From: Klebsormidium nitens
Lineage: Eukaryota > Plantae > Klebsormidiophyceae
Direction of reading: 5' to 3'
NCBI GenBank assembly: GCA_000708835.1
Contig: DF237081.1
Location: forward strand, 62,001 to 126,000
Length of the DNA stretch: 64,000 nt
Positions 42,701-62,046 of the stretch are shown here, piece after piece. The notes under the pieces are model-generated. The model had not been told where the DNA came from. It was given only the letters and a program-made list of their open reading frames with translations, and ran no database searches. Numbering within the stretch: position 1 is the first letter of the stretch; the number at the start of each line of letters is the position of its first letter. The position numbers were made by a program, and so were the translations under genes.

Positions 42701-44845
42701 CCGATCTTTCAGGTCCGCTTCCACCCGATTCACCCCAACAAGCTGCTCTCCTCCACGGTAGACGGCCTGGCTCAGATGCGTCTCTTATTTCAACGTTGCT
42801 AACCCAGTTCGCTATACCCAAATCTTCAGGTCCGCTTCCACCCAATACATATCACAAGCTGCTGTCCTCCTCGGTAGACGGGGTGGGCTAAGATGCGTTC
42901 GATTTAACGTGTCTAACCCAATTCAACAACCTTCAGTAACCCATTTTCAGGTCCGCTTCCACCCGATTCACCCCAACAAGCTGCTGTCCTCGTCGGTGGA
43001 CGGCCTGGTGTGCGTTTTCGAGACGGGTGGCACTCTCGACGACGAAGACTGCATGGAAACGGTGCTCCCCGTCAACACGTCCGTCTCTAGTTTCGGCTTC
43101 TACGGCCCGCAGGCGGAGAACGTGTGGTGCTTGACGAACATAGAAACGATGAGGTGAGGGGGACCGGTCATCCACGGAGTCTTTCTAGTGTTGTCGACCT
43201 CTTGAAAAAACGTCCGTCTCTAGTTTCGGCTGCTACGGTCATCAGGCAGAGGATATGTGGTGCTTGACGAACATAGGAGCGTTGAGGTGGAAAAAAAAGA
43301 TAACCAGTCATTCACGCAGTTCTTCCAAGTATTGTCGACCTTTTGGAAAGAATGTTCGTCTCTAGTTTTGGCTTCTACGGTCAGCAGGCCGAGAATGTGT
43401 GTTGCTTGACGAACATCGAAACGCCCAGGTGAGGGATAGAGTCGTCGACAGTCGGAAGAGGCAACACCTTCAAACCACCGTGGATTTCTCCTTCGAGCGA
43501 ACTCACTGTGTTTGGCTAAGTTCGAGACGCTGAAGGTCACGGCAGTTGCTCAGGATTGTGCAGTCAATCTAGAGGCGTCGAGCTTCGGAAGTAAGAAAAG
43601 CCCTTACAAGAGGATTCTGCCCCTTCTGCGAGTGTAGAGTCACTGCTATGCTATTGATAAAGAATTCTTGATACGAATCAATTCTTGCCGTTCGTTCTCA
43701 CATGGAGAGCCCAGCGGTAGCCTCTCGAGGGTGCTGTAATCCTGTCTGCACTCAAGCTAGCACAATATGTTCAAACGGCTGGTTTTCTACATTTGATGCA
43801 GATCTTGCTCCTTCTTTGTGAGCAATTCCATTATTCATCAGCACCACTTTCTGAATTCTGAGTCTCCCGTTCACCGTCTCCCGTCAGCGACGCTCGTCAT
43901 TCCGCTCATCCTTTCCGTTCTCCGTGCAGTCTTTGGAACTGGGCGGAAGGGGCCCAGCTGGCGGACTTTCCCGAGACCAGGGAACTGGCGTCGAGACAAT
44001 GGCAGGGACCGCCAGTAAGATGTCGCCCAACTTTCTTATCGCTGTTGATGGATTGCACACCCGTTGAGCCTTACGTCACTTCCGTTCGAGTGGGCATAGC
44101 AAGCGCTTGCAATGGCGGTCGGATGGCTCAAATCGCCGCAACAACAGACGATCAGTTCCGTCGTCGATTTTGATTGGTCAGAAACCGACGCCGGTGATGC
44201 CGTCCGGCAAACCCCTACGCTCAATGTAATCCGTTTATAATACCTTTGAACACATGACAGGACCCCTCTAGTTGAATCAACTGGCGGTGACTCTTCTCGA
44301 CAATCTGGAGACCCGCTTGCTCTCGTGTCGAAGAACATCGCAGTGAACCGAAGAACTTCAGTGACAGCAAGCACCGTTATCATTTGAGGATCACTAACAA
44401 TTGCTCTGGGCAGGTAAACAAGCTGTCAAGAACATGCTTTCCTGAACAACTCACCAAGCTCGAACACTCTGTCCCGCAGATTGACTATCTGATCCAGTGT
44501 GAATACGACCCGTCCACGAGCCAGCTGGACCTGGTGGCAGGCACCCAGGACGGGGCAGTGGGCGTATTCACAGTAGACCAATCAAACCGCTGTTCAGACG
44601 CGGCGGTTCCCAGAGGATCGCTCCGTCCAGCAAAGGAAGTGTATCACGGCGCGCACGAATCTGTGGTAAGAGCGTTTTGTAGGATACGAGAGGGGCAGAG
44701 CTCGGGGCTTATATGGACCGGGGGAGAGGATAGGAAGATGGTGGGCTGGGCTCGGGGCCCAGGGGATGTGAGGCCTCAGCCAGCGGGTTCGAGTGACCTG
44801 GTGATGCGAACATCGGGGCCCTCGAGAAGACACAGTCCGTATTGA
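39788..44845 (+). CDS. WDR89: WD repeat protein 89 (plant GTS1-like)
   Basis: DYVFDI, GHTDTIHELGF..SCSSDGTVREWDLR, LWDRR..FEESHMEQVTQ|VRFHP..LLSSSVDGLVCVF..DDED, SLWNWAEG, IDYLIQC, AHESVVR, WTGGED, terminal RHSPY*. Confidence 0.88.
41670..42950 (+). repeat. Array of 3' splice-site echoes upstream of the WDR89 exon starting at 42951
   Basis: Unit = CTAAC branch motif + pyrimidines + AG|GTCCGCTTCCAC...GTAGACGG; AG ends at 42482, 42596, 42712, 42829 and 42950 (real); decayed copies at ~41670, 41740, 42155 and 42370. Confidence 0.92.
43080..43440 (+). repeat. Donor-side echoes downstream of the same WDR89 exon
   Basis: cgtccgtctctagtttcggcttctacgg...tgcttgacgaacatagaaacgatgaggtgagg (real, ends ~43160) repeated at ~43210-43270 and ~43355-43435. 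Confidence 0.9.
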
Positions 44846-45832
44846 GTTTCCGGCTACTAAGTAACTGCTTTCATTGTTACTTCAATGAACTCATGTCTAC
44901 AATTTTGGTATAAGACCCCCCTTACTGTCAGATGCTCTCTTATTGCCACATTTATAGGGGTTGGGGGCCTCCTGATCAGAGACTAGAGTAGTGGTGCGGC
45001 CGAATGCACCACCGACCTGGAGTAAAACAAACGGATGCTGTCAATCATGTGTGGCTTTGCTAGGCCTGCAAGCCGATGCTTGCAGGCACTCCATGACGTC
45101 ACCAATCCGCGCCATACACCTGGGTTTTCGAAAGTTAGCAGGTGTGCAGTCGAATTTGCAGAACCAGAGCGCCAGCTAGACTATCAGAATATAGTGCTTC
45201 CCTCGGACGGTTGAATCTTTAAGTTACCACAGTAGCTACATGGGCGTTCACGACCCAAAAAATGGACCCTATGGCACATGTCACGTATGCCTGGCATGGA
45301 CTCAAGCGAGTAGCCCTCGTGGCACTGATTGACGTTTGAAAGGAGAACATCACGAAGCATGTGTAATCTGAACCGTCTCGTCGAGTAACCAAGTTCCTAT
45401 CATATGCATGTCGGTGCTGCAATCACCGGTGCAAATAGTGACGTACATGCGGTGGTGCACGTGAGTCGTACAAAAGTTCCAGATCATTCAAGATGAGCAG
45501 TTCATGTATATCTGTACCCGCCGCTTCAAGCAAAAGGAATGCACCATGACCGCGGCAGAGACCGCTACGATCACAGTGACTTAACGTCCGTATGTTGTTC
45601 AGAAATCATAAACAAGATACTGACCGCCAGCTGTGGCTGAGGCCATGGTGTTGAAGTTTGACAGAGTTTAAGCAATGATCGATTCAGTAGCAACGATACA
45701 TGATTCGATTCGATATTCAGACGTCTCCCTTTGCGAAGAACATCCTGCTACAGCCCTTGCTAAACGTACAGATCACATGACATGATGACTACATGCATCC
45801 ATATTGGAGACACTGCAGAAGGTCGACCGCTG

Positions 45833-46483
45833 TCAACCAAATTCCCGTTTTTGCCTTTCTCGAAATTCGTCCAGAGCTCTTTGCTGTTCGAGACAACTCC
45901 TATATCCCTGTATGAGATCTAGCAATCCTCCTGTGCACCCTAGGAAAACCAGAGGCATCAGAGACTTTCGACGAATCCCAAGAGGTATCGCAACGGCGCA
46001 TCCAAGAAGGGAATACACATAGGAGCTGCAAATAGAAAGGGAACGTCATAAAGGATTGCAGATTGGAAGAGTGGAGGCAGGTCTTTGGGAATGATATAAT
46101 GATTACACAGATATAGTGCCAAATGTAAACCGTTTTGGTCCAGTGCGGGAACAGGACATGTATCTTCACGGCCTGCCGTCCATGAGCCTCGGACCACATC
46201 AACCAATCTTGGCGTGTTAGGAGTTGATGTATGTGAAACTATCTTCAAACTCTTGGAAGAAGGTGACGCAAGAAGTGGTGCCGGAGAACCTGTACCCCAG
46301 TCTTCGTACTTTCACAAGGTTTGCAATTATGTCTACTGGAGAGACCACAGCATGCTGTAATCCAGGTTTTGGCTGCTTGCTTCTCATGAAACCCTTGCAC
46401 TAGCGCGCTCACCTTCCCATGATGCAATCACCCAGATCTTCTTTCAGCTGCTTCTCCGTCTTGGGTATGACAGGGGGCTCCAT
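45833..46483 (-). CDS. Small (87 aa) hydrophobic membrane protein of unknown function, 2 exons
   Basis: Exons 46413-46483 and 45833-46025 in phase: MEPPVIPKTEKQLKEDLGDCIMGSSYVYSLLGCAVAIPLGIRRKSLMPLVFLGCTGGLLDLIQGYRSCLEQQRALDEFRERQKREFG*. Confidence 0.7.
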
Positions 46484-47746
46484 AAGGCTGGCGCCCCCAC
46501 TCACAGAGTGCGCCTCAAGTTTCCTCGTTGATTGAGTTTTCAATCAATGTATCCTAGCTCTCTCAAAGGAGCACCACACGTAGCTCAATTCGGATACAAG
46601 AAGTGGTATGGCTATCAACACATTAGATAACCAGTATCATTCAGATACACGGGTTTAGCTACACTTATCATTTGAAAAGAACCGAAGTGGTGGTGCTTCA
46701 CAAGAGAGCTACTGCGAAGCCTGCCTACCACTCTCCTATCTTCTGTTGTGACATGGCGACCCTGGGAAATCATCTAAGTGCAAATAAAACGGGCTTTCTC
46801 AGGTTTCTGAATCCATCTACAACGCAAAGAGCTGTAGAATCAAGCAGACGAGCAGTCTCCGCTAGTTTCAGCTGTGTACAGCATGTGCAGACAAAAGACG
46901 TTCAATATGAAGTCGTCGCACAGCAGACTTCCGCTCAACCAGCGGTTTCCACACTCCACAGGATACCTACTGAACCTGAACTTGAAGGCTGAAGCGCGAA
47001 CTGGCTCCAACTTGAATGCTGCCGCCTTCAACAAGTCTGTCCAGCTGGCAGCGAGTCGGCCGTCGTTGAACTTGACCCTCGGGAATTGCAGGTTTTCAGA
47101 CTTCGCGTACCGCGACGTTTTCGACGCTTCATGTCGAAGTTGTTGACAAGGCAGGCAAATTAGAGATAAAGTTTGGCAGGGACGACCGGGACGTATCTTG
47201 TCCCAGCTCCGCCGTCGAACGACTTTCCGGAACTAAATTCAAAATTCCAGACTGGATAATGTTCTCGTCATGACGTGACTCTTGACCACAAACCGAGGTC
47301 GGTGACACTCGGAGAGGAGCTAGACAGAGAGAAAGGAGGAGACGCGAGAGAAGGAGCCAGTGGCAGGAAAAGGGAGCGATCAGGGTTTGTGACATAAAAG
47401 GGAGGCGCTGCATACTCCCGAAGGCACTACATTAGTTAGTGACGATCCACCAGAACAGGAGGACTCGTGCATTGTGTCCGAGGAGCTGTGGTTGCGACAT
47501 GAGGGGAGAGTGAAGCTTTCATAGCTGCATTGCAGTCCCCTCCAGCAAAAGGACAAACGAACCGGCTGGCTCTTGCGCTGGATTGAACACAGTCTTTGTA
47601 GCTGCTGTGCCGGTTGTACAAGCCTGCACATTAATTTTGAAGTGACATTATCTCATCAAAAGCTTTTGGTAATCGGTGTTCCGGTGCTGCATCCTATGAA
47701 ACAGAGGACCATCTGATTGGTAAGAGGATCCGAGCATTGAGCATAC

Positions 47747-50700
47747 ATGGCGGCGTCCTCCCTGTGCAGAAATGCGGCCTTTGATCTTTGCGCCCCAACG
47801 CAGACCCGGCAGATCGAAAGCGGAAGCAGAATTGCCGGTTGCTTTGCTTCCTGCACAAGTAACATCGTTCCACAGACTCAACGATCAAAGAAGGATGTAC
47901 GTTTGAATGCGAGGAAAGTAGCAGCAAATGCAGAGGTTTTGGGTGCTTCTGCTACTTATGGTGGAGCCGCGAGGAGATGGAGAGCTGCCGATTTTGTGCC
48001 AAGGCGCACAATGCAAGAATCCGCAAGAGGGACGTGTGTAGCTGCATCGAAGGGTAAGTGTAGCATTTTACATGATTTCTGTCATCTTTCTGAGCCGAGA
48101 CCTTTTCAGTTTCTACTGGGGTAGTTCACATTCATCCACTAATGTTGGATGAGATGCCATCCCAACTGCGTCATTGAGTTTGTTGGGCCTCCAGGGCGTC
48201 TTGGTAATGATGTGGCTGATTTGAAATTGCAACAAAGATTCTTTGTACGTATGCTCAACAACTGGCTTGGCTTTTGGGTAGATGCAAAAACCTACAAATG
48301 TAGTATGACTTACTCGAACCAACGCAAAGGGAGGGAGGTTCTTGGAACCCATGGACGAGTTTGAAGGAGCACAGTACAGCGGGTGCAGCATGAACGAGGG
48401 AGTCAATTGAGTTTTGAAGTTGCCTTCCTTCTAGAGGGACAGCGCTCATTTGATACCATGTCAGATCAGGCTGTTTCATTCCGTGAGCATTAGGGGGCAA
48501 GAATTTGCTGCTCCCTGATGTCTCCAGTGAACGCTACGTTCAATGAACCATCACAGTGCTTCCAAACACTCAGCCTCGTCCGAAGGGTTCCAAACGGTCA
48601 TGATCACATCTGATGAGAGAGCTACTGTGAGCTCCCCTCTGAGGTGATTTGCTCTGGGCCTCATCTAAGAAGAGGCATGCTGCTGGAGCAGGAATTCTGA
48701 CAGACGCCCAGCCAGAATATGTAACGTCCTGTGGCGAGCATAACGTATGGGCTCCACCGCGGGCGCGTCCACCAAAATTTGCAGGCGTCTAATATGGCCT
48801 ATTGGCAACTATTTGCACCCATTTTCGGGTCAACGCACCCGGTGTAGCCCTCAGTGTCAAGGAGGAAGTGGCCCTATGTCTGACTTTCCCAGCTAAAATG
48901 CAGATTTTGGGCAATCAATTGGACTGGTCAAATGGCACCCAACAATGGCGGAAACTTGTACAGAACATACTGGGACCTAGCCAATCGATTTGAGCTTGTG
49001 GGCAGTTTGAATATGACTAATCCGTCCGCTCACAATTCTGCTCGCGCCAACTTTTTGGCTGGCGTCTGCGCCCTCCGGGTACTGATCCCGGTCCTCTTAA
49101 AGCTCCTCCCCGCTCTCTTGCGGAGTTTTCATTTAGCTTTGTGGCGTGCTCTGCAGATGGTTCAGAGGTTGTGCTTGAGTGGAGAGGAAATGCTGACAAA
49201 GTCCTGCTTACGGGATCGTTCCTGGAGTGGGACAAGAAGGTGCCCCTTGAAAAGGCGGGCGAAGGGGTGTTCAAGGTTAAATATGTGAGCATGAAGGCTG
49301 CATTTCCTCATGCTCCTAGGTCTAAAGACAGATGCTAAGGACTTTGGTGTTTTACCCCCTCTGTTTGCCTTCAATGTGAGCCCCAGCATTTTGATGGTGT
49401 GAGAGACTACTTGCGCACGGCTTGCTTCTGCAAATGTTTTGAAACTTGAAGACAGATTGTGATCCTCGGGTCAGTTTCTGAGACACAAGCAGACGGCTCC
49501 GGCCGGCTTAACAAGGTCTCACCTTGAGGACAGAAAACAAGATGCCCCATCAAGTCTTTTGCTATAATGGGGACTTTCTGAGGCTGCTAGGCGCGGTCTT
49601 TCCTACAAACCTAGTTTTCCCATACAGAATGCAATGTAAGCAAAACGCCTCTGTTTTGATTGGTCCATATGTCAATTGATAAGCAAGGGTTAGGTACAAT
49701 TTGTATAGCAAGTGACGTTGAAATGCCGCCGCTGCAACGCTTTGCTCAAGTGAACCGTCAGAGAAGATATAGCACGGTCTGAAACAGCAAGATTCAAGAG
49801 CTTTTTCTGAGCTCTGTACGGTTCCCTCACGACGTTCAATCGGACGCTGCAATCACAATGCACAAACGTAGAGGTTCAAATAGTAACTTTTATCTGTTAT
49901 GATTCTTTGTTCGTTTTGTCTCCTTTGTCGCTTGAATTTGAAGAGTGGGACCCGCCTGTATTTCCCACCCTTACTGTAGTTCCACTGTTGCCTTTCCAGA
50001 CGCTGCCACCTGGCGCTCACCAGTACAAATTTCTGGTGGACGGAGAGTGGCAGCATCGGAAAGATGTTGACACCGTCCCGGACGGCATTGGAGGGGTGAA
50101 CAACCAGGTGGTTGTGGAGGGTACGTCTCCGCAGGTTTCTTTTCTGATAAAGACAGACTACGGTGTCTGCAGCAGATTTTGCGAATTCTTTTTGTCTCCT
50201 CAGACCGTGCTTTTTGAGTGTGATAGGAACAGGGCCTCCGCAGCGACAAACGTCCGGTATTGCCGAATGGTTTCTCGCTTCGGGAAGCATAGTCCCACGC
50301 TGGATGGGTTCTATGGTTGTGTACGTTTGTATAGATGCATCATCTGAATCCTTGACACCTCAGTTCTTCTTTCTAGGGGCAGCCTCGAAAGCTAAATGAG
50401 GGTCAATCTTAAGTCAGCACATTGCGGCTATGCAAAGCTTTGCTTTGGAAACAGCAACTGAAGGTGGCTCTTGGCTGAGCTCTGGACTTGGAATGACAAA
50501 ACAGACGGGTGACTAGCCGAGCCAGGGGCTGCTCTTGGCGGGTAAACAACCCCCCCTTTACAGCCATCCTAACAGGGGGGACACTCGCATGCGAGAAACA
50601 CAACATTGTTTCACTGAGCACAATGAGAAAGTCGGCCGCAACCTTGGCCGACGTCCTCGCATCCAACGGTTTCCGGCGCCTTCGATAAAGTCAGGCTCAT

Positions 50701-53700
50701 TAGGTTCCGTCTATCAAATACAACTTTTGAAAGTCGTCAGATCGTCCATTTTTGGACGGCTTGCTGGAGAACAGCGTGGATGTCACGGCTGACATCGTAT
50801 TCTTGTGATAATAGAATCCTATCTGCAAATTTCCATTGTTTAAATAATGCTTTGAAGTTGTTCCAGCTCCGGGCAGCCCTGTTCCTGCTGGCTAGCCATC
50901 TGCTGGGAAGAGGAGACTCTGTGTGCTCCTCCATACTTCAGACTTTCCTTCAAAGGTGAAGTGTTCCCAATTGGTCCAGGTGAGCAAAGCGGCGAGAATG
51001 GAGACCAACCCTCCACCCCCACCCCCGACGAACTCCAGGCAATCGCAGTGAAGGCGCCACCCCCGGGAGAGAAGCCAGAGCCCATCGAGAAGACGGTCGC
51101 GAAGGTTATGGGAAACGATGACAAGAAGAAAGCATCAGGTGAGCGTGGCGTCTGAATATTGGCAACCTTATGCTGTGTGCACTGATTTTGTTGCAAATCT
51201 AAATTGTGTGCAGTCAGTAGTGGGTGTAGGAAACATGAAGTGATACTGTCCATAGACTCGACATAGGAGTGCTTGGCTAGTAAGGTTGTAGAGAGCGTTA
51301 CGACGTTGTTTTGACAGTCTCAATAGCTTTGGCGATGTGAGCAAGCTATAATTCCCACACAGTCTGTGGTTCGTCTTGAAAGGGGCACAGAGTCATTGTC
51401 GCTGTCTATCGTCTTCAGCAATGATTTGACTTTTTGATAGATTACTCCACTTCGGAAAATGGTTGGCGCACTGCTTTGGCCTGCATGTCCCAACGAAATC
51501 GCGTCACTCTTTTCGGTCTGCACGCTTCATGTAAAATGCTTGTAGGAACGACTCGCGGACCTACTCAATCCATAAAAAGTGTTACCCTGTCTGCTGAGGT
51601 TATTAATTGCATGCACAGACTTAAACCCAATTCATTCCAACCAGCTGAGAATCGCGCCCCTCACTATTTTGGTTTTTCCATCTGCAGAGGAGAAGGACGA
51701 GACTGCCCCCGCACCCAAGCCCGCTGCGAAACCCGCTGCAAAGCCAGCTGCTAAGGCGGCTGCCCCGGCCGCAAAGGAGGCTGACAACGGGGCGCCGACC
51801 GCAGGTGAGCGTCTTTGTCGGGAGCTTAAAGGATGGATTTGCTCTGCACGAGAAGCTAGAGAATGAACGAGTGCTTGGCAGGGAAAGCTAGAGAAGGAAG
51901 AGTGCGTAAGTGCTTACTTCGCCAGTGCGGCCTACGTTGGTTCGAAAGACGCTCCGCCAGATTTGTGAGTGGAACAACAGACGGAGGCTCATCCTGAGGC
52001 CGCAACGCCAACCACAGTATGAGCCCAAGCCCGACAAGGAATGAATGGTATTGCAAAGACTGGGGATGTCTCCACTGAAAACAGGGGCGCAAGGAACGCT
52101 ACTCGGTCAGAAAGTATGGTCATCAACACATGACTTTGGGTTGTAACTAGCATGCGCTGGTTGTAACTAGCGTGCACTCTTCCTGTCACCTCAATCTCCC
52201 CCGCAGGCCATCTCCAGTCCGGCTCAAAACCATGTTCGTTCCAATAACCCTGTGTAAGGAATTATCGCGGGACAACAACCTGTCTAGAAGACAACATTGT
52301 TTTGATTCGCACCTGTAAGATCTTGAGCAGTCAACCTGTCTTTCCCGGGTGCCTGACCAACGTCAAAAAACGAGGATTCTTTTGGGGGGACCATGTGAGC
52401 AGGGAATGCAAGTTGCCTCTTGGTTGGCGATCGTCGGGCTTCATTCTTGGCGTTGAGGTCCGCTTTGTTCTTCCCTGTGAGCTTCGTTCTCAATAAGGCG
52501 CCTCTTTCTCTCTAGCTGTTGCACCAACTTAGAAGACCAAGCCCGCTGCGGGAGGCAAAGCAGCCAACGCTTCATGTTTCTGCTTCTCCTTTTTCCAGAT
52601 ATTGCACCGACTCCGAACGCCAAGCCCGTTGAAGGCTGGGAAGAAACCCGTTTAGCCGTTTCTTAAGAAGCACACTTGCATCCCCTGCGTTTGCAGTCGA
52701 CCTACAATGCATCCTCATTTCTCACTGCAGCGTCTCCTCTTTGCCAGGTGCCCCACCAACGCCGGGAGTCAAGCCCGCCGCAAAGGGCAAGGCGGCCGGG
52801 AACAAAGCTCGTTTAGCCACCCAAGAAGCATCTTTGCATTCTCTGCGTTTGCAGTCGACCTAGGTGCCTCCTTGTTACTCATGTCACCGTCTCCTTTTTC
52901 TGCTAGGTGCCACTCCGACGCCAAAGGCCAAGCCCGCCGCAAAGGGCAAGGCGGCCGGGAAGACCGGGAAGAAAACTCATAAAGCCGTCACCCAAGAAAC
53001 GTCCTCTGCGTTTGCAGTCCACCTACGGTGTAGTGTTTCTCATTGCAGCGTCTCTCTTTTACCAGGTGCCGCTCCGACGCCAAAGGCCAAGCCCGCCGCA
53101 AAGGGCAAGGTGGCCGGGAAGAAGGCGGGCAAGGCACCCGCCAAGGCGCTCAACGAGTTGATGAACGAGGACGTGGTCCCTATGCTGTCGGCGGAACTAG
53201 AGAAGGAGAACGTGACGGACGTCGAGCTCGTGTGGGAGAACAACGAGGTGAGGGGGTCTCCTTGGCTGAAGTGCCGTTGTGTTATCTATAATATTGCATT
53301 AAGATTTCAGGGACGGCTGAAATTGCAAGCATCGAGACGTGTCTCGGTGGCTCGCGCTTTGGCTCTGGTCCATTAGAAACAGCAATCCTCTGTCTGGCGA
53401 GAGCCATGTCATTTCCTGGTCATACCAAGCGCCTGCTGAGGTCTGAATTGTTTTGGAATAAGCCAAGGGGGTCCTGGCAGCTCGAAGGGATGCCAACGGC
53501 GTGATTTGATGAACTGGGCTCACAACAAATCAAGGTGGAGTGCAGCCTACGTTCTTTCTTTAAAGGCCCTAGCGGTAGGCGTTTGCTATGCTTGAGCGTT
53601 TGGCCAGCACAGCCCAAAACGTCAAAAAGATTTCTCTGGAAGCGTTCACTACATGGCGCCTTCTGTGAAGTCCAGATCAGAACTACATTCGACTTGCTTG

Positions 53701-54412
53701 GGTCTGCGAAAATGGTCGAACGGAAACCGGTATACTGGTGAAACTGCAAGAGTGACAGTACGCTTCTCCTGACGCAGCTCCGAGGCTGTTTCGTGAACGG
53801 AGGTGTGCCGTACTGCTTCTGGGCCTTCTTTCCGGATGGCAAGATAGAAGGTAAGCCGACAACACCGTCACGACCTAGCCTCAGCGGCGGCTTATTAAAA
53901 GAAAACCCTGGCCGTCACTCGACTTGATAGGTTGAGGATGAAGAAAAGAATGGTCATCCCAACGCTCGTCTCCCGAAAAGGTGCCCAATGGGCTGCTGGC
54001 TGGTCTCTTATCCTTAGTGTTGGTCCCAGAGCAGCCGTTTCTGAGAAGCACACTTTTGCGTGTGTGGTGTTTCCTACGTGTTTCGACTTGCTCCAAGTGC
54101 TCTGCTCCTTCCTCTACATAAGGCACAAGATTTTGATATCTTCTTGAAGAGGGTCTTATGCGTGGTGAGACAAAGCAGAGATCCGGCAACGGCTACTCTT
54201 TCTTCATGTTTTTCTATTGAATCTGCTCAACGTGCTTTGTATGCGATGCAGGCTCTCGAGGATTTTCGTTAACCAGCCACGGTTATCCGCCTAGCACTAT
54301 TGAACCGTTCTTCGATGGCGAGAAGCCTCAGGCTATGTCAGCAGACATGATGGTCTTCTGGATCAAGAAGCGTCTCTTCGCACAAAAAAGCGCGCTCCCA
54401 AAGCTCAACTAG
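47747..54412 (+). CDS. NdhV: Chloroplast protein: transit peptide + CBM48 + Pro/Ala/Lys linker + NdhV (DUF2996)
   Basis: Exons begin at 47747, 49157, ~50000, ~50981, ~51689, 53066, ~53779 and ~54253, all phase-compatible. CBM48: VVLEWRGNADKVLLTGSFLEW..LPPGAHQYKFLVDGEW..GGVNN. DUF2996: FWAFFPDGKIEGSRGFSL..STIEPFF..FWIKKRLFAQ. Confidence 0.82.
48749..48850. mobile_element. Diverged second copy of the ~100-bp MITE family, in intron 1 of CBM48-NdhV
   Basis: gggctccaccgcg..accaaaatttgcaggcgtctaata..cggtgtagccc aligns with the reverse complement of 398-500. Confidence 0.6.
52520..53130 (+). repeat. Acceptor and exon-5' echoes upstream of the NdhV-domain exon
   Basis: AG|GTGCC..CCGACGCCAAAGGCCAAGCCCGCCGCAAAGGGCAAGG units starting at 52748, 52907 and 53066 (real), exact 159-bp spacing; decayed copy at ~52599. 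Confidence 0.9.
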
Positions 54413-55246
54413 TCTGCGCATAGCGGGTCCATGTTTTTGTAGCTTTGAACAACGTCACCTGGCACCACTTAGCTGCTGGAATGTCCCTCGTGTTGCCTGA
54501 GTTCCAAGCACAAACAGGTGAATTGCAGAGGTATCCTCAATTCTGTTTTCGTGAGAGGTTGAATGTAGGCCTGCCCTCATTCATCAATTCGTAAAGGTCT
54601 GACAGATCCATCCAGTCTTCACATGCAAGACATGAGTCTGTTTCTACAGAAAACAAGTTTTTCCAAGCGCAGCATTTGCTGCTTCGAGCTCGACATATGG
54701 TTGGTCGATCAAGATAACGTGTTTGATCTCTGCATGCAGTGCTCGCTCTCTCTATCTGTCAAAGTCATGACGTACAAATGCAAATGCTTTCAAGTCATGT
54801 GCCTCATTGTGCGTGAGCCATGCATGTATGTATGATGATGTATCTAGCCGACACCCATGACTCAGTAGGTGTCCAGTTGCCAGCGCGGAGTCGCTATAGG
54901 ATTCACAATATATATGGCGCAATTCCGAGCGGCCTAGCTGCCCATGCAGAATTCTCTGCGGTTGAGTGCAGCCATGCATAAAATCTGCAATCTGCAAAAT
55001 TTGACACATTCTGAGCATAATACTGGTAAGACAATTGTCTGTTGATGGTAACTTCCGGTTTATTGACGGCCTGAGTCACATAGAGCCATTGGGCAAAGTC
55101 TGCCGGTGAGACCGGGACGGTACAATGTTGATCATGCACCCATTGAATGAAGTCTCACAAGCCCGCTTATCCTCCTCTAGCCTCTCCTAGTCTGAAATAA
55201 CTTAGGTATCGGAAATTTGTCCAGGTCCAATCGCAGACCCTGTTCT

Positions 55247-58200
55247 TCAGTGTGGCGAGCGCATCAAATTTAAGATAGGTTGGTCATCAGATGTTGAAGG
55301 CCCGTTCTGTTCCAGAGGTGGGCGTTCGTGGAGCAAAGTTGGAGCGCCCCCGTTCGTGTCTCTTTGATGGTCGAACGGAGGCGACACAGACATGACACCG
55401 CCAGCTGCGCCAGACCCGCCGATGATCGGCGCTACTTGATCTGGTGTCACGGGCGCCATGCTTTCCCGTTGTCGAAATCTGTACGAAAAAGAGTGCAAAT
55501 GACCGTCAGCTGTAAAAGACGCGGGTCGCCTGGCTCGTGCCTCACCATCTTACAGTCTGTAGTGGTCGAGACTTCAAGTGAGGGCTCAAAGTCTGCGCTT
55601 CAATACGTTCATCTTGCAGACTCTTTCAAAGCACTCAGGAATGGTTCAATCCGTTCATCTTGCAGACTCTTTCAAAGCACTCAGGAATGGTCAGGCAGGA
55701 AAGGATAGATACGCACCTCTTTTGTTTGCGCTTCACGGCCTCGTCTTCGAACGTCACGCGACCAGAAACCTTGCGGAGCTTCATTGATTGTGAATCAAGG
55801 CCGAAGAAAATAAACGTCCAACCAAGCGCCCACAAGAAGTTTCCCATGAGCCGGAATCCACGGGCCGGATTGTCTCAAGGACGTCTTTACCCGTCAGTGG
55901 AATCTGACTTGCCTCACCTTTGCAAGACGGGCCGTGCCACTGGAGCCTCCCTTTCCAAGCTCGCCGCCGCAGCCCGCTTCCATGCCCGCAGATTCGCCCG
56001 CAACTCTTCCTCTCGTATCCTTTTCGCGGATTTCGCGTCTAACATTGCTCCAAGCCGTTTTTCAACCCCTCCTCCGTCTACCAAATCCAATTCAATTTTA
56101 CCGCTGCCGGGGGTCCCGGCGAGCCCGCCATCCGCCCCCCCGTTCGCCACCCCGCCGTGACCGGGGGGCACAACAAGCCCGTCATTTACCCCCCCGTTTG
56201 CCAGCTCGGCTCCTGCGGGCGAACCCGCTCTAATTTCTAACCCCAATCCGGACAACCGCTCCCCGTCGGCGGCAGTAAATGCGGCGACCGCGAAACCGCC
56301 GACGCCCGCTAGCCCGAGCGCCGCGAGGGGCCGGTAGCTGACGTCAGCTGCCAGCTGGATGAGCAGATCCTTGCCCCAGTCGGGGAGGGTAATAAAGACT
56401 TCGCACGTGGGACCTCCGGAAGCGATGGTTGTCGTGCGACGAGCGGGGAGGAGGCTGGGGGCTTTAGGGAGGGTCTGGAGGGCGGACTGGTCGAAGAGAT
56501 GTCGCTTGAGGTGATACTCTAAGACCTGCACGGGGAGGTGAAGACAAGGTTCTCTGTGTCGAATCCAGCTTCCAAAGCTTTGTTGCGAGAACTCCCGGAG
56601 TCACGGTTACTTGATACGCAACTCGTCTGCTTCAATGCCATCCGCTTTTGGAGGTGTTGTGCTGTGAGAATAGCTTATAAAAATGAGGCTCTTTGGAGCG
56701 TCCGAGGGAGAGACAAGTCAAAGAGGTCATCCTCTTGGTATTTGCGAAGTGGGTTGGGGCGAATGTTTTAAAAAAATGTAGGCAGCAAAATGCTGCAATC
56801 GCTCGGTTTACGATGAGGCGATATCATTTCAAATTTCAATCCATTCGAAAACAGCTGAATCATACAAATAGTATAGAAAGCCACTTCAGACGAATGAAAA
56901 TAGTTTACCGTATAAGACCTGCAAACATACGCTTTATACGTACTATAGCCATCCACCGCAAATAATTGTATAATCGATCGTGCGAGCATCAAATACGTAC
57001 GTCAGATTGCGTGTGCTCCTGATAAGCTATGATAAATCTAAAGCTTATCCCCGTTACGACTTTCTGGCGGGCGCGATTCAGAGAACGGCCGGCCGCGCGG
57101 CTCTGTCGGTAGTCGGGCGATGCAGACCCGACAGGCACGTGCAGAGTTCAGGGTTTAACCCCTAGAAAAAAGTTTTGCGAAGCATCGAACCTCAAAACCC
57201 GTCGAAAATGGGGGTCTGCAAAATCAGACCGTGAATCACTGAATTCTACGTTCGACGGGCCGAACCGGGCTTAATAGAGTGATCCAGTCTGCATCGCCAC
57301 TTCCCCCTTTTCTGAAACCCCGCGATTGCGACAGCTCGGTACTGACTTTGTCAGTAAACCGAGCTAAAAACTTTGGCTACTTCTAAATAGGAAACGGAGG
57401 ATGCTTCGTATACTGGATGTCTGAAGCTGCAAAGCTTGGAGGGGTACTTTACCCGCCCCGACTTTGTGACTAGAACTAGACATATCCACGCCGGTATCGG
57501 CACACGTCGGAAAACACGAAGATCGCGGCAGGGAGGGGAGGTATGATCGTTGCGAAGCAAAGCTTCTGAATCAAGGGTCATGTTCCTAAACTCAGGAGAC
57601 CGAAGATGGGTTGCCAAGTCTGCGCATGGCAACCTCCGGAACGGCTGTAGCAGCGTAAATCTAGGCACAAGAGAGCCGTTGGAAGCCTCATCATCCGCTG
57701 CGGTTGGAAGCCCATCTCTTCTCTCTACGCCTAAATAGTCCCAAAGTCAGAAACTGACCGACTTTCTGCTTCTTTATATCCATACCCGCCCTTCGCGAGG
57801 CCCCTCCCGCTCACCTCTCGATCCTCAAACGCTTCCGCCCGTCCGACCGCCGTCACGGCCAGCCTCGCGCCGCTTCCCGTGCAAAGCTCACACCGCGCGA
57901 ACGTCGCCCCGTTTCTTGCCCCGATCGCCGCGACCTCCTGATTTGGCGCCCCCCCAACCGCGTGCTGGGTTAGCCTCAAACCCCGCACCTCAGCCGCGAG
58001 CAAAACCCTTAAACCCTCGCCGAGGGCCTGCGTTTTCGGCGGCTCCAAAACCGCCGGCGCGCCAAAGAGCAACAGCCGCAGCTCTTGGTGCAGCTTGAAG
58101 AGGACGGACGCGCTGAGGGTTCCGTTGGGCGGAATCCGTTGCTGGAGCTCGAGCGAGCAGGAAACGGAACGAGGGGGCGGAATGCCGGAGATGGAGGGGC

Positions 58201-60921
58201 GCGGAAGGGGGGTGGAGCAGTGGATCCGGTGGGCGGATTCCGCCAGGCGGAAGGCGTCGTGAGGGGAGACGGAAGGGTTCCGGAGGCAGGAGAAAAGGGC
58301 GGTGAAGAACTGGGCCGCAGCCGGGGGGGCGGAATGGGTTGGCCAGTAGATAACGTGCTGGACCCCCTGCAAGAAAGAAACAGCGGAGCGGACATGACTC
58401 AGTTTGAAGGCTGATGTTCTCGGGAGACAGGGCAACCGCCGGTGTCTTCAGCGATCATAGCAAGGGAGAAAAGCGGCGCAAAAAAAGACATCCGGTGACA
58501 ATACCGGATGACGGCACGAACCAGAGAGTCGTTGAAGTGTCCCCGCAAACGCTTTGATCGCGTATCTCGCCCGAACAAGATCAAATTCCGAATCGCTTAG
58601 CTCCTCACCGGCCTTTCTCAAAGAACCTTCTGGCGATCAGCCCGGTTGTTAAAGATCCGTCGTGAACCAAGTGTTCAATGCCGGCATAGCCTGTAATAAA
58701 AGGTTTCCAACTGGTAGCCTTGAGGCAGAGTCTCGAGAAGCATGGCTCCCATATCGGTCCATTGAAATATGATGGAATGAGAACTCTCAGATCGGACGTA
58801 CATTGAGGTTTGGTGCCGAAACAAGCTTGTTACGAGCCGTTTTCTAGCCGAAAGAACAAGCGACGGGTCTACGACGCAGGCCTGGCCCCGGTTAGAGGGA
58901 CTCACTTTGCTCCGCATCAGTTCTGCGTGCTTGGGTGTGAGGACGACGTTCGCCAAAACCTGCAGACACAAAATCTATTTTCATTAACTGGCTTCTGCTT
59001 AGTCCTCCAGCCTTCTTTTTCGATCCGAAGGTGCTCGAATAGACTTTTATTCCCGCCGATGAGCCCTGTACTTCGTGATCCAACGTGAAGCTTTCTCATT
59101 CGGTCAGAAGTCGCCGATGAGCTTTCACCCCTTGCCACCACCGAAGGCGAACTCGTTCATAGGCGTCCAAAATTGTATTATTGGAAACTCTACCCGGAGC
59201 TCAAAAAGCTTTTCCGCTCGGAATTGAAGTATTCCGACCCACCAGGTATGTATCTCTTAGAGCTCAAGCACCTCAAGTTGGCGAATGTTCAACATCCTTA
59301 GGGAAGAAGTTCCACAGTCCATCAAACAGAAAGCTCATCAGCACTTCGAGACTCTCAAGAAAGATCACAGCATCCAACGGTGGCCATCTATCTGGTAACT
59401 GACGAGTCAACCAACGGTTGACTTACCAAATCCGGGAAGTGGACCGAAAATATCTCAGCCAGATTCTCAGAGGAAGGAGGCTGTGCGTCTCCCAACATCA
59501 GCAGACCCGTGACACTCGCTTCGTTGGAAAGTGTGACGATGGGTTCGGTACCCCAGGGGGAGTCCCGATGGCTGAAGAAAACTAGGTTGGGCTGCATGGC
59601 TTGAACGATGTTTTGGAGCATCTGCAATGTTGGTCGCTCGATGAACTGGACCTGTGAGAAGAGTCAAGCGTTTGGTCTCCTTTATAGAGACGTTCGAATC
59701 CGGACCAGATCTTATTCCGGATTGTTATCTTAGCAGGACAAGGTCAAATGGGAGGGGAAAACAGGGTTAAGGAAGTGGTTTGCGAAGTTACGCAGACTCT
59801 GCCAGACCCTTCTTACGAGACTTTTTCATGCAAGACCACATTGCTCAGGTCTTTCTGCTCATTATAAATTAAGCGAAGCTCTGTCATCCGTCAACCAACA
59901 CGGTGCAAAGCCAAACCACATAAGCAGGGGGTGATCGGGGAAAGTGGCAACAAATATGTTGTTCACAATGGATAAGCAGCATTCAACAGGGTGTTGCTTT
60001 TCAAAAAACGTGCTGCCTCTCTTTTTAAAATATTTCCCAACACGAATCTGACCCTCATCATTGGACGGAGGACGCCTCGCCACTAACTAATTAGGCGGGG
60101 TTCAGCTTCCACTGACTATTCCCACTAGCCTCTGGCTTACTTAACTCACCTCTGCTTCCCCTCCCTGCAGCTCCTGGAGCCCTGGAAAGGAGCGGATGAA
60201 GTCGGCTGGGCTGAAGGACGATCCGGCTGGATTGCTGGAGGCCGGAGAGGGACCAACTGCAGGCAAAGATGACATTAGTCTGGGGTTAAGTTTTGACCTA
60301 TGTGCTCATCAGTGAAATCAAGACTCTGTGATGCTTTTGGAGGCCATGTGAAGCCCCATGTGATCTGTCCCTTCCCTTCAGTTTGTACAAGCTGGTCGAA
60401 AGGCTTCACAGTATATTGACCGTAAAGCAATCCAGGAGGTATCAAAAGAAAGGTGAAAAGATGTTCTTAGCTTTAGAGCAGGACAACTTTCTTCAGCAGG
60501 TGACAGGCTCAATTGTCATAGCAAACTCCTTTGAAAGGCAGACACATTTTCACACGTTTGAATGAATCCTGCTGTTCCTTGGTTCAAGTACTTTGCACGC
60601 AAAATGTTCTAAATTCAGCAACTTGTTGTAAGATCATTGTGCATTGATCAAAAAGAATCTTGCTTAGCCAGATTGACTACTTTCTGGAAAATCCATATGA
60701 TGGAAGATTGTGCCACCAATCAATTGACAGCAACAAAGTACAATTACTTTTACACCACCCCACTCAAGAGTCACATTACATTACAGCAAGCAGTGAGCAA
60801 ATAACCAGCATACAACCAGCGGCTTTCAACTGACCTTCAACTCACCTTCTAGTTGATCTGCTGGCGGCGGCCCACTCAAGACCGCCAGCACTTTCCATTT
60901 TGACCGCCTTCCATTGACCAT
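55247..60921 (-). CDS. ARID4-like protein (homolog of the plant ARID4 N-terminal region; no ARID or PHD domain found)
   Basis: KWKVLAVLSG, FPGL, VQFIERPT, QPNLVFF, FPDLV, RSK|GVQHVIYW, GLRVLLAAEVRG, RCEL, LEYHLKR, TIASGGPTCEV..PDW..LIQLAADVSYRPLAALGLAGVGG match recalled plant ARID4 motifs; 3' exon structure is uncertain. Confidence 0.72.
55600..55691. repeat. Near-perfect 46-bp tandem duplication
   Basis: tcaat(a/c)cgttcatcttgcagactctttcaaagcactcaggaatggt twice. Confidence 0.9.
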
Positions 60922-62046
60922 GCTGAAAAGGACAGAAGCAGCTGCCAATGTGGCTGCTGGAAAGGTGACTCCACTACCACTAGAGGAGTCGCATTTTCGG
61001 TTGAAATTGAGGCTTCGATGCGTTGTTCTGAGCGAAAATGGCAGAAGAAAGACGGCCCAGCACAGGCTAAGCTCTGACTCTGAGTCTAGCTGAACACAAA
61101 ACAGAGCTGGGCATGCGAGCTATTGTGGAGGTGTAACGAGACCGGGAGGACATTTGTTTGCTATCGACCAAAACTTTCTGCACTCCATGCTCCACGTTCG
61201 AACTTCGTGATCGGACTGAAGAAGTAACCGCAACTTGAGCCGTCGATGTTGACGAACTCATGTTGAAAGCTGTACCATGCGAGAAGAGTACTCTACTTGG
61301 TAGGCCCGTCAGCAAGGCCTGCACAAACAACTTGACGTGACGGAAGCTCAACAGAAGCCTGAGAAGGAGGAGGACAAGCCTGCAAGCATGGATGATGGAG
61401 TTGGGCGCCATTGCAATGCTCAAATGCGTTTTGTAGGTCCGACTCTGAGGGGCAATTGTTTTGCTGCTCCGCCTTCTTTTCTTTGTGAGGGGTAGCTATT
61501 CGGGAAGGTCATCCCGGTTAGGGGTGATGCCAAGACTTCAGAGTTGTTTCCTGGTATTGAGTTGTGAAAGTCAAAGGCTGTGCGCCCGTGGACTACCGCT
61601 GGAATGATCATACTGGGTCCAGCAGGAGAATTGAGTTGTTTTCAGCTCTTGTTTGGTTGGGGGAGCCTTGCAAAGCGCACGTGAGCAACCCGTTGGATGC
61701 TGTCTATTGTAGAGTTCCACAGCTTCACTCCTTAGAAACAGGGTCAATTTGCAGGTCCTTGAGTTTGCTGTTTGCCGGCTGCAGGTTGCCTTGTTACTAC
61801 TACTAGCAGCCCCATGGTGCAGTGCACTCACGGGAGACTTTGAATTGTCATTAGCAGGCCTGAAAAATAAAGCAGTATTAGGAACAGCAAGGAGGAAGGC
61901 ATCATAAGTCATTTCAGTAGGATTGCTTATGTGACAAGGAGCGAGCTCGTGTCTTGATGCCAGCAAGCTCACCCTAGGCAAACCATAGGGCACTGAAAAG
62001 TAAGAACTCTAAAAGGGGGTTGAAAGGCCACGGCCTGGAGCAGAAA

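What the first reader, a model, noticed from the sequence alone, without database searches (positions are those of the whole stretch)
47747..54412. Starch-binding CBM48 fused to the NDH-1 subunit NdhV
Sequence: one phase-consistent exon chain with no internal stop, encoding transit peptide, CBM48, a PAK-rich linker and DUF2996. Established: NdhV is a small peripheral NDH-1 subunit that aids ferredoxin-dependent cyclic electron flow, and CBM48 targets PTST-type proteins to starch. I know of no such fusion. Inference: it may tether NDH-1-bearing thylakoids to starch granules or the pyrenoid sheath, or regulate cyclic electron flow according to starch status.
Basis: partly seen in the sequence, partly recalled or inferred. 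Interest (0 to 1): 0.82.

Follow-up and report, generated by a model that had tools for sequence, protein, structure and literature searches.

The report
Starch-binding NdhV with skippable CBM48 cassette
This alga's gene for NdhV, a small helper subunit of the chloroplast NDH-1 electron-transport complex, really does carry a starch-binding module; the fusion is shared by all 20 non-seed streptophyte species that turned up here and I found it in no paper, and about a third of the messages skip the module.

Summary
Eight GT-AG exons (47747-54412, + strand) give a 415-aa protein. It reads presequence, CBM48 (Pfam AMPK1_CBM), a roughly 115-aa Lys/Ala/Pro linker, then DUF2996/NdhV.

Spliced contigs from four transcriptome runs show every junction, including the CBM48-to-linker junction. 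This is one gene, not two.

New points:
1. A second junction joins exon 1 directly to exon 4. It skips the two CBM48 exons (249 nt, in frame) in roughly 35-40% of messages, so the same gene also makes plain NdhV.
2. The fusion is not unique. It occurs in Chlorokybus, Klebsormidium, four zygnematophytes, liverworts, mosses (including Physcomitrium patens), lycophytes and ferns. It is absent from the angiosperm, Ginkgo, Pyramimonas and cyanobacterial proteins seen.
3. The CBM48 is a two-exon, phase 1-1 cassette of 249-255 nt in all five species mapped. Annotated Diphasiastrum isoforms differ by exactly this cassette.
4. The glucan-contact residues are conserved across 22 fusion proteins.

The pyrenoid-specific idea is weakened, because pyrenoid-less land plants keep the fusion. 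Starch tethering or sequestration of a dissociable NDH-1 subunit is my best mechanism, and it is inferred. I found no paper describing the fusion. Other scan notes on this genome report other starch-module fusions, not this one.

The parts
47747..48053 (+). Exon 1: start codon and a 102-aa presequence. It is rich in Ser/Thr/Ala/Arg (16 K+R against 6 D+E), looks like a transit peptide, and ends in phase 1.
   Evidence: The N-terminus MAASSLC is shared with the complete K. subtile transcript ORF P0001. Junctions 48053->49157 and 48053->50980 appear in four runs. The region is disordered in the model.
49157..49284 (+). Exon 2: first half of the CBM48 (cassette exon A, 128 nt, starts in phase 1). 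It holds W127, the equivalent of AMPK beta1 W100.
   Evidence: Pfam AMPK1_CBM 33.9 bits, profile 3-38. Alignment to AMPK beta CBMs. Junctions.
50000..50120 (+). Exon 3: second half of the CBM48 (cassette exon B, 121 nt). It holds K155, W162 and N179/N180.
   Evidence: Pfam AMPK1_CBM 47.6 bits, profile 42-80. PDB AMPK beta1 CBM E 6e-7. The exon is 121 nt in Ceratodon, Calypogeia and Ceratopteris too. The junction 50120->50980 appears in four runs.
48054..50979 (+). The span removed in the alternative mRNA. Exon 1 is joined directly to exon 4, which skips the 249-nt CBM48 cassette in frame and gives a 332-aa plain NdhV.
   Evidence: The joint 48052->50979 (GT..AG, cut +1) appears in all four runs at depth 151/470/110/18. 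The exon 1 to exon 2 joint has depth 257/872/185/12. Frame check.
50980..51138 (+). Exon 4: the acidic, Pro-rich start of the linker.
   Evidence: This part is poorly conserved against K. subtile (linker 55% identical).
51688..51804 (+). Exon 5: the Lys/Ala/Pro-rich part of the linker.
   Evidence: The linker is disordered in the model (pLDDT about 40).
52506..53065 (+). Array in intron 5 of four decaying copies of the 3' splice site plus the start of exon 6, at roughly 159-bp spacing. None is used in splicing.
   Evidence: The only junction seen is 51804->53066.
53066..53247 (+). Exon 6: end of the linker and the N-terminal helix of the NdhV (DUF2996) domain.
   Evidence: Pfam DUF2996 profile 4-38, and the junctions.
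53778..53850 (+). Exon 7: the middle of the NdhV domain. It is 73 nt, the same length in all five species mapped.
54252..54412 (+). Exon 8: the C-terminal part of the NdhV domain, including the position that aligns with the ferredoxin-contact pair, and the stop codon TAG at 54410-54412.
   Evidence: Pfam DUF2996 profile 76-117. It aligns to T. elongatus NdhV (6khi_V) residues 102-141. The loose end at 53851 reads this exon in four runs.

Best explanation
Shown: this is the nuclear gene for the NDH-1 subunit NdhV of a Klebsormidium alga, in what turns out to be the ancestral streptophyte format. That format is a chloroplast-type presequence, a CBM48 starch/glycogen-binding module, a roughly 115-residue disordered Lys/Ala/Pro linker, and the NdhV (DUF2996) domain. 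The CBM48 is a two-exon, frame-neutral cassette. About 60-65% of mRNAs include it and about 35-40% skip it, so one gene yields both a CBM48-bearing and a plain NdhV.

Inferred mechanism: the C-terminal domain docks next to NdhS/NdhI at the ferredoxin-binding site of NDH-1, as cyanobacterial NdhV does. Cyanobacterial NdhV is a loosely bound, sub-stoichiometric activator of ferredoxin-dependent plastoquinone reduction. The CBM48 has an intact glucan-binding site and holds the long isoform on alpha-glucan, most likely the surface of starch granules. The long flexible linker would allow either of two outcomes. It could bridge stroma-exposed thylakoids to nearby starch, or starch could sequester part of the activator pool. 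Either way, NDH-dependent cyclic electron flow or chlororespiration would be coupled to starch status. The splice ratio would set the shares of tetherable and free NdhV.
For: Gene and transcript:
- Exon chain and frame.
- All junctions, plus the skip junction, in four transcriptome runs.
- A complete K. subtile transcript ORF with the same architecture: 78% identical overall, 89% in the CBM48 and 95% in the NdhV domain.

NdhV identity:
- A profile of 12 fusion and plant DUF2996 regions hits only T. elongatus NdhV of the Fd-NDH-1L structures 6KHI/6L7O, at E 1.7e-21 over residues 40-143 of 146.
- Exon 8 alone hits it at E 0.0023.
- NdhV is transient and promotes ferredoxin binding through Arg122/Lys123 (PMC7021789).

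CBM48:
- Pfam scores are above the cut-off on both exons.
- The modelled domain of the K. subtile orthologue superposes on the AMPK beta1 CBM-cyclodextrin structure 4yef with TM 0.95 and rmsd 0.8 A.
- The equivalents of AMPK beta1 W100, K126 and W133 are invariant, and N150 nearly invariant, in 22 fusion proteins.

Conservation:
- The same fusion occurs from Chlorokybus to ferns.
- The phase 1-1 cassette structure is the same in five species.
- Diphasiastrum isoforms differ by exactly the cassette.

Architecture: two confident domains are separated by a disordered linker, and pTM is 0.34.
Against: - No binding, localisation or complex-association data exist; the mechanism is inference from domain identities.
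- The second basic residue of the ferredoxin-contact pair is Pro in Klebsormidium (K-P, against KK in land plants and RK in T. elongatus).
- DUF2996-only proteins also occur in a haptophyte, whose plastids are not known to have NDH-1, so the domain need not always act in NDH-1.
- CBM48 modules can also mediate protein contacts, as in AMPK.
- Isoform shares come from per-contig k-mer depths, which are rough.
- Organism identity rests on similarity to K. subtile and on other agents' notes.
Confidence: 0.55

Rival explanations
1. The CBM48 is a protein-protein or structural module of the NDH-1 complex in non-seed streptophytes. It would anchor the weakly bound NdhV to other subunits or to PSI, and would not act as a starch binder.
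For: CBM48 of AMPK beta also packs against the kinase domain in the AMPK structures that are the best fold matches. Early-diverging plants lack several SubB/SubL subunits (PMC11629750), so other stabilising elements are conceivable. Arabidopsis NdhV is described as stabilising NDH (title of Fan et al. 2015, cited).
Against: The residues that contact the sugar in AMPK beta1 are conserved across 22 fusion proteins from distant lineages, which points to selection for glucan binding. The long disordered linker and the low pTM argue against a fixed place in the complex. A plain isoform is made alongside the long one.
Confidence: 0.2
2. The long isoform works at the starch granule independently of NDH-1. 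The NdhV-type domain would act as a ferredoxin-docking adaptor that brings reduced ferredoxin, or redox signalling, to starch-metabolising enzymes. Only the skipped isoform would serve NDH-1.
For: NdhV contacts ferredoxin directly (PMC7021789). DUF2996 proteins exist in a haptophyte, which from general knowledge has no plastid ndh genes. The two isoforms are made in comparable amounts.
Against: In cyanobacteria NdhV had no effect on ferredoxin-dependent plastoquinone reduction when NDH-1L was absent. The NdhV domain is the same in both isoforms. No partner at starch is known.
Confidence: 0.15
3. There are two neighbouring genes, a small CBM48 protein and NdhV, merged by the reader or by read-through transcription.
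For: An 860-bp intron separates the CBM48 exons from the linker exons. The word searches returned no public protein for this gene of the window's own genome.
Against: The exon 3 to exon 4 junction has the same depth as the constitutive junctions in four runs. The path from exon 4 to exon 8 is unbranched. The same fusion is present in 20 species (19 besides the window's own), with conserved intron phases.
Confidence: 0.02

Closest known systems
NdhV (Arabidopsis At2g04039; Synechocystis Sll0272; T. elongatus Tlr0472, chain V of PDB 6KHI/6L7O)
   Same: The C-terminal 115 residues are a DUF2996 domain. It is homologous over its full length to the structurally defined cyanobacterial NdhV (E 1.7e-21), and the Sphagnum orthologue's domain is 59-62% identical to angiosperm DUF2996-only proteins. 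Angiosperm proteins also carry a basic Pro/Ala/Lys stretch before the domain.
   Different: It carries an N-terminal CBM48 on a roughly 115-aa linker, which the cyanobacterial, chlorophyte (Pyramimonas), Ginkgo and angiosperm proteins seen here lack. The CBM48 is optional through exon skipping. One of the two ferredoxin-contact basic residues is Pro.
PTST1/2/3 (PROTEIN TARGETING TO STARCH), plant CBM48 adaptor proteins
   Same: A plastid protein with one CBM48 that could bring a partner to starch. This is the same working logic (from established knowledge).
   Different: There is no coiled-coil region. The cargo is covalently fused rather than bound, and it is an electron-transport subunit rather than a starch synthase. 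It is not a family member.
AMPK/SnRK1 beta-subunit CBM, and the CBM48 of the glucan phosphatases SEX4 and LSF1
   Same: These are the best sequence and fold matches of the CBM48: 41% identity, TM 0.95 and rmsd 0.8 A to the AMPK beta1 CBM. SEX4 and LSF1 are weaker hits. The sugar-contact residues are conserved.
   Different: There is no AMPKBI C-terminal domain and no phosphatase domain. Public names such as 'AMPK subunit beta-1 isoform X1' for the Selaginella orthologue are misnomers.
Starch-binding pyrenoid proteins of Chlamydomonas (SAGA1/SAGA2 and LCI9, with CBM20), and the TROL-like protein with a CBM25 noted elsewhere in this genome (scan note s1-261742)
   Same: A starch-binding module is joined to a protein of another chloroplast sub-compartment, which suggests tethering between starch and photosynthetic machinery (from general knowledge and an unchecked scan note).
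   Different: The CBM family and the partner both differ. The NdhV fusion persists in plants without pyrenoids, so it is not pyrenoid-specific.

Membership tests
NdhV / DUF2996 (PF11210) | Significant match to the DUF2996 profile over the whole domain | tested here: met
   The exon pieces match complementary parts of the profile (4-38 and 76-117); each piece alone scores below the 27-bit cut-off. The K. subtile orthologue, 95% identical in this domain, scores 49.2 bits against the 27-bit cut-off. The spliced window protein scores 152 bits against a profile of 11 non-Klebsormidium orthologues.
NdhV / DUF2996 (PF11210) | Homology to the NdhV chain seen bound to NDH-1L in cryo-EM structures | tested here: met
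   The profile A1 hits 6khi_V/6l7o (Tlr0472) at E 1.7e-21 over residues 40-143 of 146, and no other PDB hit falls below E 0.3. Exon 8 alone gives E 0.0023.
NdhV / DUF2996 (PF11210) | Two consecutive basic residues that contact ferredoxin (Arg122/Lys123 in T. elongatus) | tested here: inconclusive
   Land-plant fusion proteins have KK or KR at this position. The window protein has K-P and K. subtile has R-P, next to a two-residue insertion, so only one basic residue is kept and the alignment is locally ambiguous.
NdhV / DUF2996 (PF11210) | Physical association with NDH-1 and an effect on ferredoxin-dependent plastoquinone reduction | not testable with these tools
   This needs BN-PAGE/MS and fluorescence assays. 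The K. flaccidum genome paper reports an NDH complex and NDH-type cyclic flow (PMC4052687). It predates the description of NdhV.
CBM48 (AMPK1_CBM, PF16561) | Profile match above the curated cut-off | tested here: met
   Exon 2 scores 33.9 bits and exon 3 scores 47.6 bits against a 26.8-bit cut-off. The K. subtile orthologue scores 88.6 bits.
CBM48 (AMPK1_CBM, PF16561) | Beta-sandwich fold of the AMPK beta CBM | tested here: met
   In the AF2 model of the K. subtile orthologue (89% identical in this domain), residues 100-187 have pLDDT about 90. Foldseek gives 4yef_C TM 0.95 and rmsd 0.8 A over 80 columns.
CBM48 (AMPK1_CBM, PF16561) | Sugar-contact residues (AMPK beta1 W100, K126, W133, L146, N150; numbering from Polekhina et al. 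2005, recalled from memory) | tested here: met
   The window protein has W127, K155, W162, I175 and N179 at the aligned positions. W127, K155 and W162 are invariant and N179 is at least 90% conserved in 22 fusion proteins.
CBM48 (AMPK1_CBM, PF16561) | Actual binding of starch or alpha-glucan | not testable with these tools
   This needs a pull-down or ITC with the recombinant domain.
PTST family | Coiled-coil region upstream of a C-terminal CBM48 | tested here: not met
   The CBM48 is N-terminal to the other domain. The model shows no helical coiled-coil segment, only a disordered presequence and linker. It works like an adaptor but is not a PTST.

The most novel reading that the evidence does not exclude
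From the origin of streptophytes until the seed plants, NDH-1 was physically coupled to starch through its dissociable ferredoxin-docking subunit. A conserved, frame-neutral CBM48 cassette, included or skipped by alternative splicing, sets how much NdhV is held on starch granules. In this way it would tune NDH-dependent cyclic electron flow or chlororespiration to the carbohydrate state of the chloroplast. Seed plants later lost this control.
Probability: 0.35. Interest if true: 0.85.

Novelty: new variant of a known kind. Interest (0 to 1): 0.72.

Why it matters
NdhV is regarded as a small single-domain accessory subunit. Its standard form outside the seed plants carries a starch-binding module, and this appears not to have been noticed. 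No paper in the searchable library combines NdhV with CBM48, and none of the eight that mention both NdhV and starch has a title or abstract that concerns a starch-binding NdhV. [quoted passage not shown] Yet the moss has the fusion protein, filed as an AMPK glycogen-binding-domain protein (A0A2K1L204).

The finding gives:
- a concrete identity for the 'missing' NdhV of bryophytes, lycophytes, ferns and streptophyte algae;
- a testable molecular link between cyclic electron flow or chlororespiration and starch;
- an old example of a domain cassette that is kept skippable, seen in Klebsormidium and in a lycophyte;
- a dated loss at the base of the seed plants that can be compared with other changes in NDH architecture.

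Tried and rejected
- The spliced 415-aa protein has no reference, so I did not type it into remote tools. I used exon references, the K. subtile orthologue P0001 and local scripts instead.
- A word search with whole P0001 was swamped by the low-complexity linker and gave only 2 true hits among 8000 candidates. Searches restricted to the DUF2996 region worked.
- No public protein of the window's own genome appeared in those searches, so I could not tell how this gene is annotated publicly.
- The phmmer hits P0013, P0015 and P0017 are spurious low-complexity matches.
- Pfam scans of seven long ORFs in the flanks found nothing.
- The ESM Atlas look-up returned only generic CBM clusters.
- The held supplement of PMC11629750 does not list the moss fusion protein.
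- Fan et al. 2015, the Arabidopsis NdhV paper, is not held. It could mention longer homologues, and I could not check.
- Paper searches for NdhV with Klebsormidium, for PF11210 and for A0A2K1L204 found nothing relevant.
- The exact exon chain for the Closterium model failed because that model is merged with a retroelement. tblastn still shows the CBM48 in two pieces there.
- I rejected the 'two genes' reading and the idea of a pyrenoid-specific tether.
Full report
**1. Gene model**

Reading 47000-55200 and joining eight GT..AG-bounded exons gives a 1248-nt CDS and a 415-aa protein with no internal stop. The exons are 47747-48053, 49157-49284, 50000-50120, 50980-51138, 51688-51804, 53066-53247, 53778-53850 and 54252-54412.

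Pfam scans of the exon translations find AMPK1_CBM (the AMPK-type CBM48) on exon 2 (profile 3-38, E 3.8e-8) and exon 3 (profile 42-80, E 2e-12). They find DUF2996 on exon 6 (profile 4-38, E 0.012) and exon 8 (profile 76-117, E 1.9e-4). Pieces of a split domain should match complementary parts of a profile, and these do. Scored locally against profiles built only from non-Klebsormidium orthologues, the spliced protein reaches 152 bits for DUF2996 and 107 bits for CBM48.

**2. One transcript, two isoforms**

The runs that hold this stretch are coded 'RNA?'. In the four I laid (four studies, two organism labels), exon contigs have depths of 100-1100 and intron contigs 2-10, and the exon contigs are spliced. 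They therefore behave as transcriptomes.

Every predicted junction from exon 1 to exon 7 is present in all four runs with GT..AG ends. A 255-nt loose end at 53851 reads the first bases of exon 8. One contig covers the tail of exon 1, exons 2 and 3, and the head of exon 4. Another covers exons 4 to 7 and runs on. The path from exon 4 onward is unbranched, so transcripts that contain the CBM48 exons continue into the NdhV exons.

The same data show a second junction, 48053->50980, in all four runs. Its depths are 151, 470, 110 and 18, against 257, 872, 185 and 12 for the exon 1 to exon 2 junction. It removes exons 2 and 3 (128 + 121 = 249 nt, 83 codons) and keeps the frame, because both flanking introns are in phase 1. 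The product is a 332-aa protein: presequence, linker, NdhV.

By these rough per-contig depths, about 35-40% of messages skip the cassette; the estimate reaches about 60% in the shallowest run. The branch points of the contigs lie exactly where a de Bruijn graph would break if both junctions exist in the reads.

**3. Identity of the two domains**

A profile of twelve DUF2996 regions from the relatives found below hits one solved protein at E 1.7e-21. That protein is Tlr0472, the NdhV chain of the T. elongatus ferredoxin-NDH-1L structures 6KHI/6L7O, matched over residues 40-143 of 146. Exon 8 alone aligns to residues 102-141.

The paper on that structure describes NdhV as a transient, sub-stoichiometric subunit held by NdhS. 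It helps ferredoxin to bind, with Arg122 and Lys123 at the interface (PMC7021789). At those positions the land-plant relatives have KK or KR. The two Klebsormidium proteins have K-P or R-P beside a two-residue insertion.

The CBM48 aligns without gaps to the AMPK beta1/beta2 carbohydrate-binding modules. In AMPK beta1 numbering, which I recall from Polekhina et al. 2005, the sugar-contact residues W100, K126, W133, L146 and N150 correspond to W127, K155, W162, I175 and N179 here. In an alignment of 22 fusion proteins, W127, K155 and W162 are invariant and N179 is at least 90% conserved.

An AlphaFold2 model of the K. subtile orthologue shows two confident domains. Residues 100-187 have pLDDT about 90 and residues 278-385 have pLDDT 75-92. 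The presequence and a roughly 90-residue linker are disordered, and pTM is 0.34. The CBM48 superposes on the cyclodextrin-bound AMPK beta1 module 4yef at TM 0.95 and rmsd 0.8 A.

**4. The fusion is old and widespread**

A phmmer search with exon 8 against 1.84 billion representative proteins gave 29 hits. Two word searches restricted to the DUF2996 region added more. Pfam scans and source names show CBM48 plus DUF2996 in these taxa:
- Streptophyte algae: Klebsormidium subtile (390 aa, complete transcript ORF) and Chlorokybus atmophyticus.
- Zygnematophytes: Netrium, Closterium, Spirogloea and Mesotaenium.
- Liverworts: Calypogeia, two Riccia species and Marchantia paleacea.
- Mosses: Sphagnum, Ceratodon and Physcomitrium patens.
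- Lycophytes: Selaginella and Diphasiastrum.
- Ferns: two Adiantum species, Ceratopteris and Pteridium.

DUF2996-only proteins were found in all angiosperms seen (198-228 aa), Ginkgo (244 aa), the chlorophyte Pyramimonas (195 aa) and a haptophyte, and the cyanobacterial NdhV of the solved structures (146 aa) has no CBM48. The simplest history is a gain at the base of the streptophytes and a loss in the seed-plant stem. Hornworts, Chara, Coleochaete and Mesostigma were not sampled.

Between the window protein and K. subtile, identity is 77% in the presequence, 89% in the CBM48, 55% in the linker and 95% in the NdhV domain. This pattern is expected if both domains are under selection.

**5. A conserved skippable cassette**

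I mapped four public proteins exactly onto their genomic loci. In Ceratodon, Calypogeia, Selaginella and Ceratopteris, as here, exon 1 ends in phase 1. The CBM48 is encoded by two exons, the first 131-134 nt (128 nt here) and the second 121 nt. In Selaginella the public isoform retains the intron after the second exon. The cassette is a multiple of three (249-255 nt), and the next exon starts in phase 1. A 73-nt exon and a 143-146-nt last exon are conserved as well. This argues for a single origin by exon insertion, and it means skipping is frame-neutral everywhere.

In Diphasiastrum complanatum, the annotated products of one locus (O6H91_04G031500) are 320 aa and 238 aa. They differ by exactly the 84-aa cassette. 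This is the same event that the reads show in Klebsormidium.

**6. Mechanism**

The following are shown: the architecture, its expression, the two isoforms, the conservation of the sugar-binding residues, and homology to a subunit that binds NDH-1 reversibly at the ferredoxin site.

The rest is inferred. The CBM48 would bind starch, or soluble alpha-glucan. With the long flexible linker, it would either tether NDH-1-bearing thylakoid regions to granules or sequester part of the activator pool on starch. NDH-dependent cyclic flow or chlororespiration would then depend on starch status, and splicing would set the free share.

Two rivals remain open. In one, the CBM48 is a protein-contact module within NDH-PSI. 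In the other, the long isoform acts at starch independently of NDH-1. The 'two genes' rival is excluded.

**7. Comparison and novelty**

The protein is a member of the NdhV/DUF2996 family and carries a bona fide AMPK-type CBM48. It works like a PTST-type adaptor but is not one, since it has no coiled coil and its cargo is fused to it.

In the searchable literature I found nothing on this architecture:
- No paper combines NdhV and CBM48.
- Only two papers mention DUF2996 at all.
- Eight papers mention both NdhV and starch, and none has a title or abstract about a starch-binding NdhV.
- The two papers I opened of the nine that mention NdhV with Marchantia do not mention it.
- A 2024 paper on the Physcomitrium PSI-NDH supercomplex says NdhV could not be identified because it has no database record. 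The moss protein A0A2K1L204 / LOC112276432 has both domains.

Fan et al. 2015 could not be read.

Public databases already hold these sequences under uninformative or misleading names, for example 'AMPK subunit beta-1 isoform X1' in Selaginella. The sequences are therefore not new, but the reading of them is. I rate this a new variant of a known kind.

**8. Context from the scan**

Other agents' notes name the genome Klebsormidium nitens. They describe intronic 'echo' arrays of exon edges, a TROL-like protein with a CBM25 tail, and a CBM48 fused to methionine synthase in the same genome. I confirmed an echo array in intron 5 of this gene and did not test the other notes. The scan notes returned for NdhV, DUF2996 or NDH held no earlier finding of this fusion.

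Noticed in passing
window 52506-53095: Intron 5 holds four decaying in-register copies of the 3' splice site plus the first 35-60 nt of exon 6, ahead of the real one at 53056 (spacing 83, 149, 159 and 159 bp). Some keep a CAG/TAG acceptor, but none is spliced in any of the four runs.
   Followed up: partly
L005 9159-9230, 9301-9372, 9701-9760 (Closterium sp. NIES-53): The Closterium orthologue also has degenerate extra copies (70-85% amino-acid identity) of its 73-nt exon and of its last exon inside introns. The exon-edge echo habit is therefore not confined to Klebsormidium. The public model P0009 is merged with an RVT_2 retroelement ORF.
   Followed up: partly
P0085 / P0071 (Physcomitrium patens LOC112276432, A0A2K1L204): The moss has the CBM48-NdhV protein although a 2024 PSI-NDH paper reports NdhV as absent from the database. 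Isoform X2 lacks the presequence, not the CBM48.
   Followed up: partly
L003 2476-2874 (Selaginella moellendorffii): The 23 extra residues of isoform X1 ('AMPK subunit beta-1' by name) correspond to a retained 69-nt intron right after the second CBM48 exon. X2 splices it out.
   Followed up: partly
P0020 (Diacronema lutheri), P0007 (Pyramimonas), P0019 (Ginkgo): DUF2996-only proteins occur in a haptophyte. Haptophyte plastids are not known to carry ndh genes, so the domain may have a role beyond NDH-1.
   Followed up: no
window 48737-48743: Run X2 shows three clustered base differences (A>G, T>G, A>C) in intron 1 in one low-depth contig. This is a strain difference or an error.
   Followed up: no
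window 40000-47700 and 54500-64000: Seven long ORFs in the flanks gave no Pfam hit. The neighbouring genes were not resolved.
   Followed up: partly
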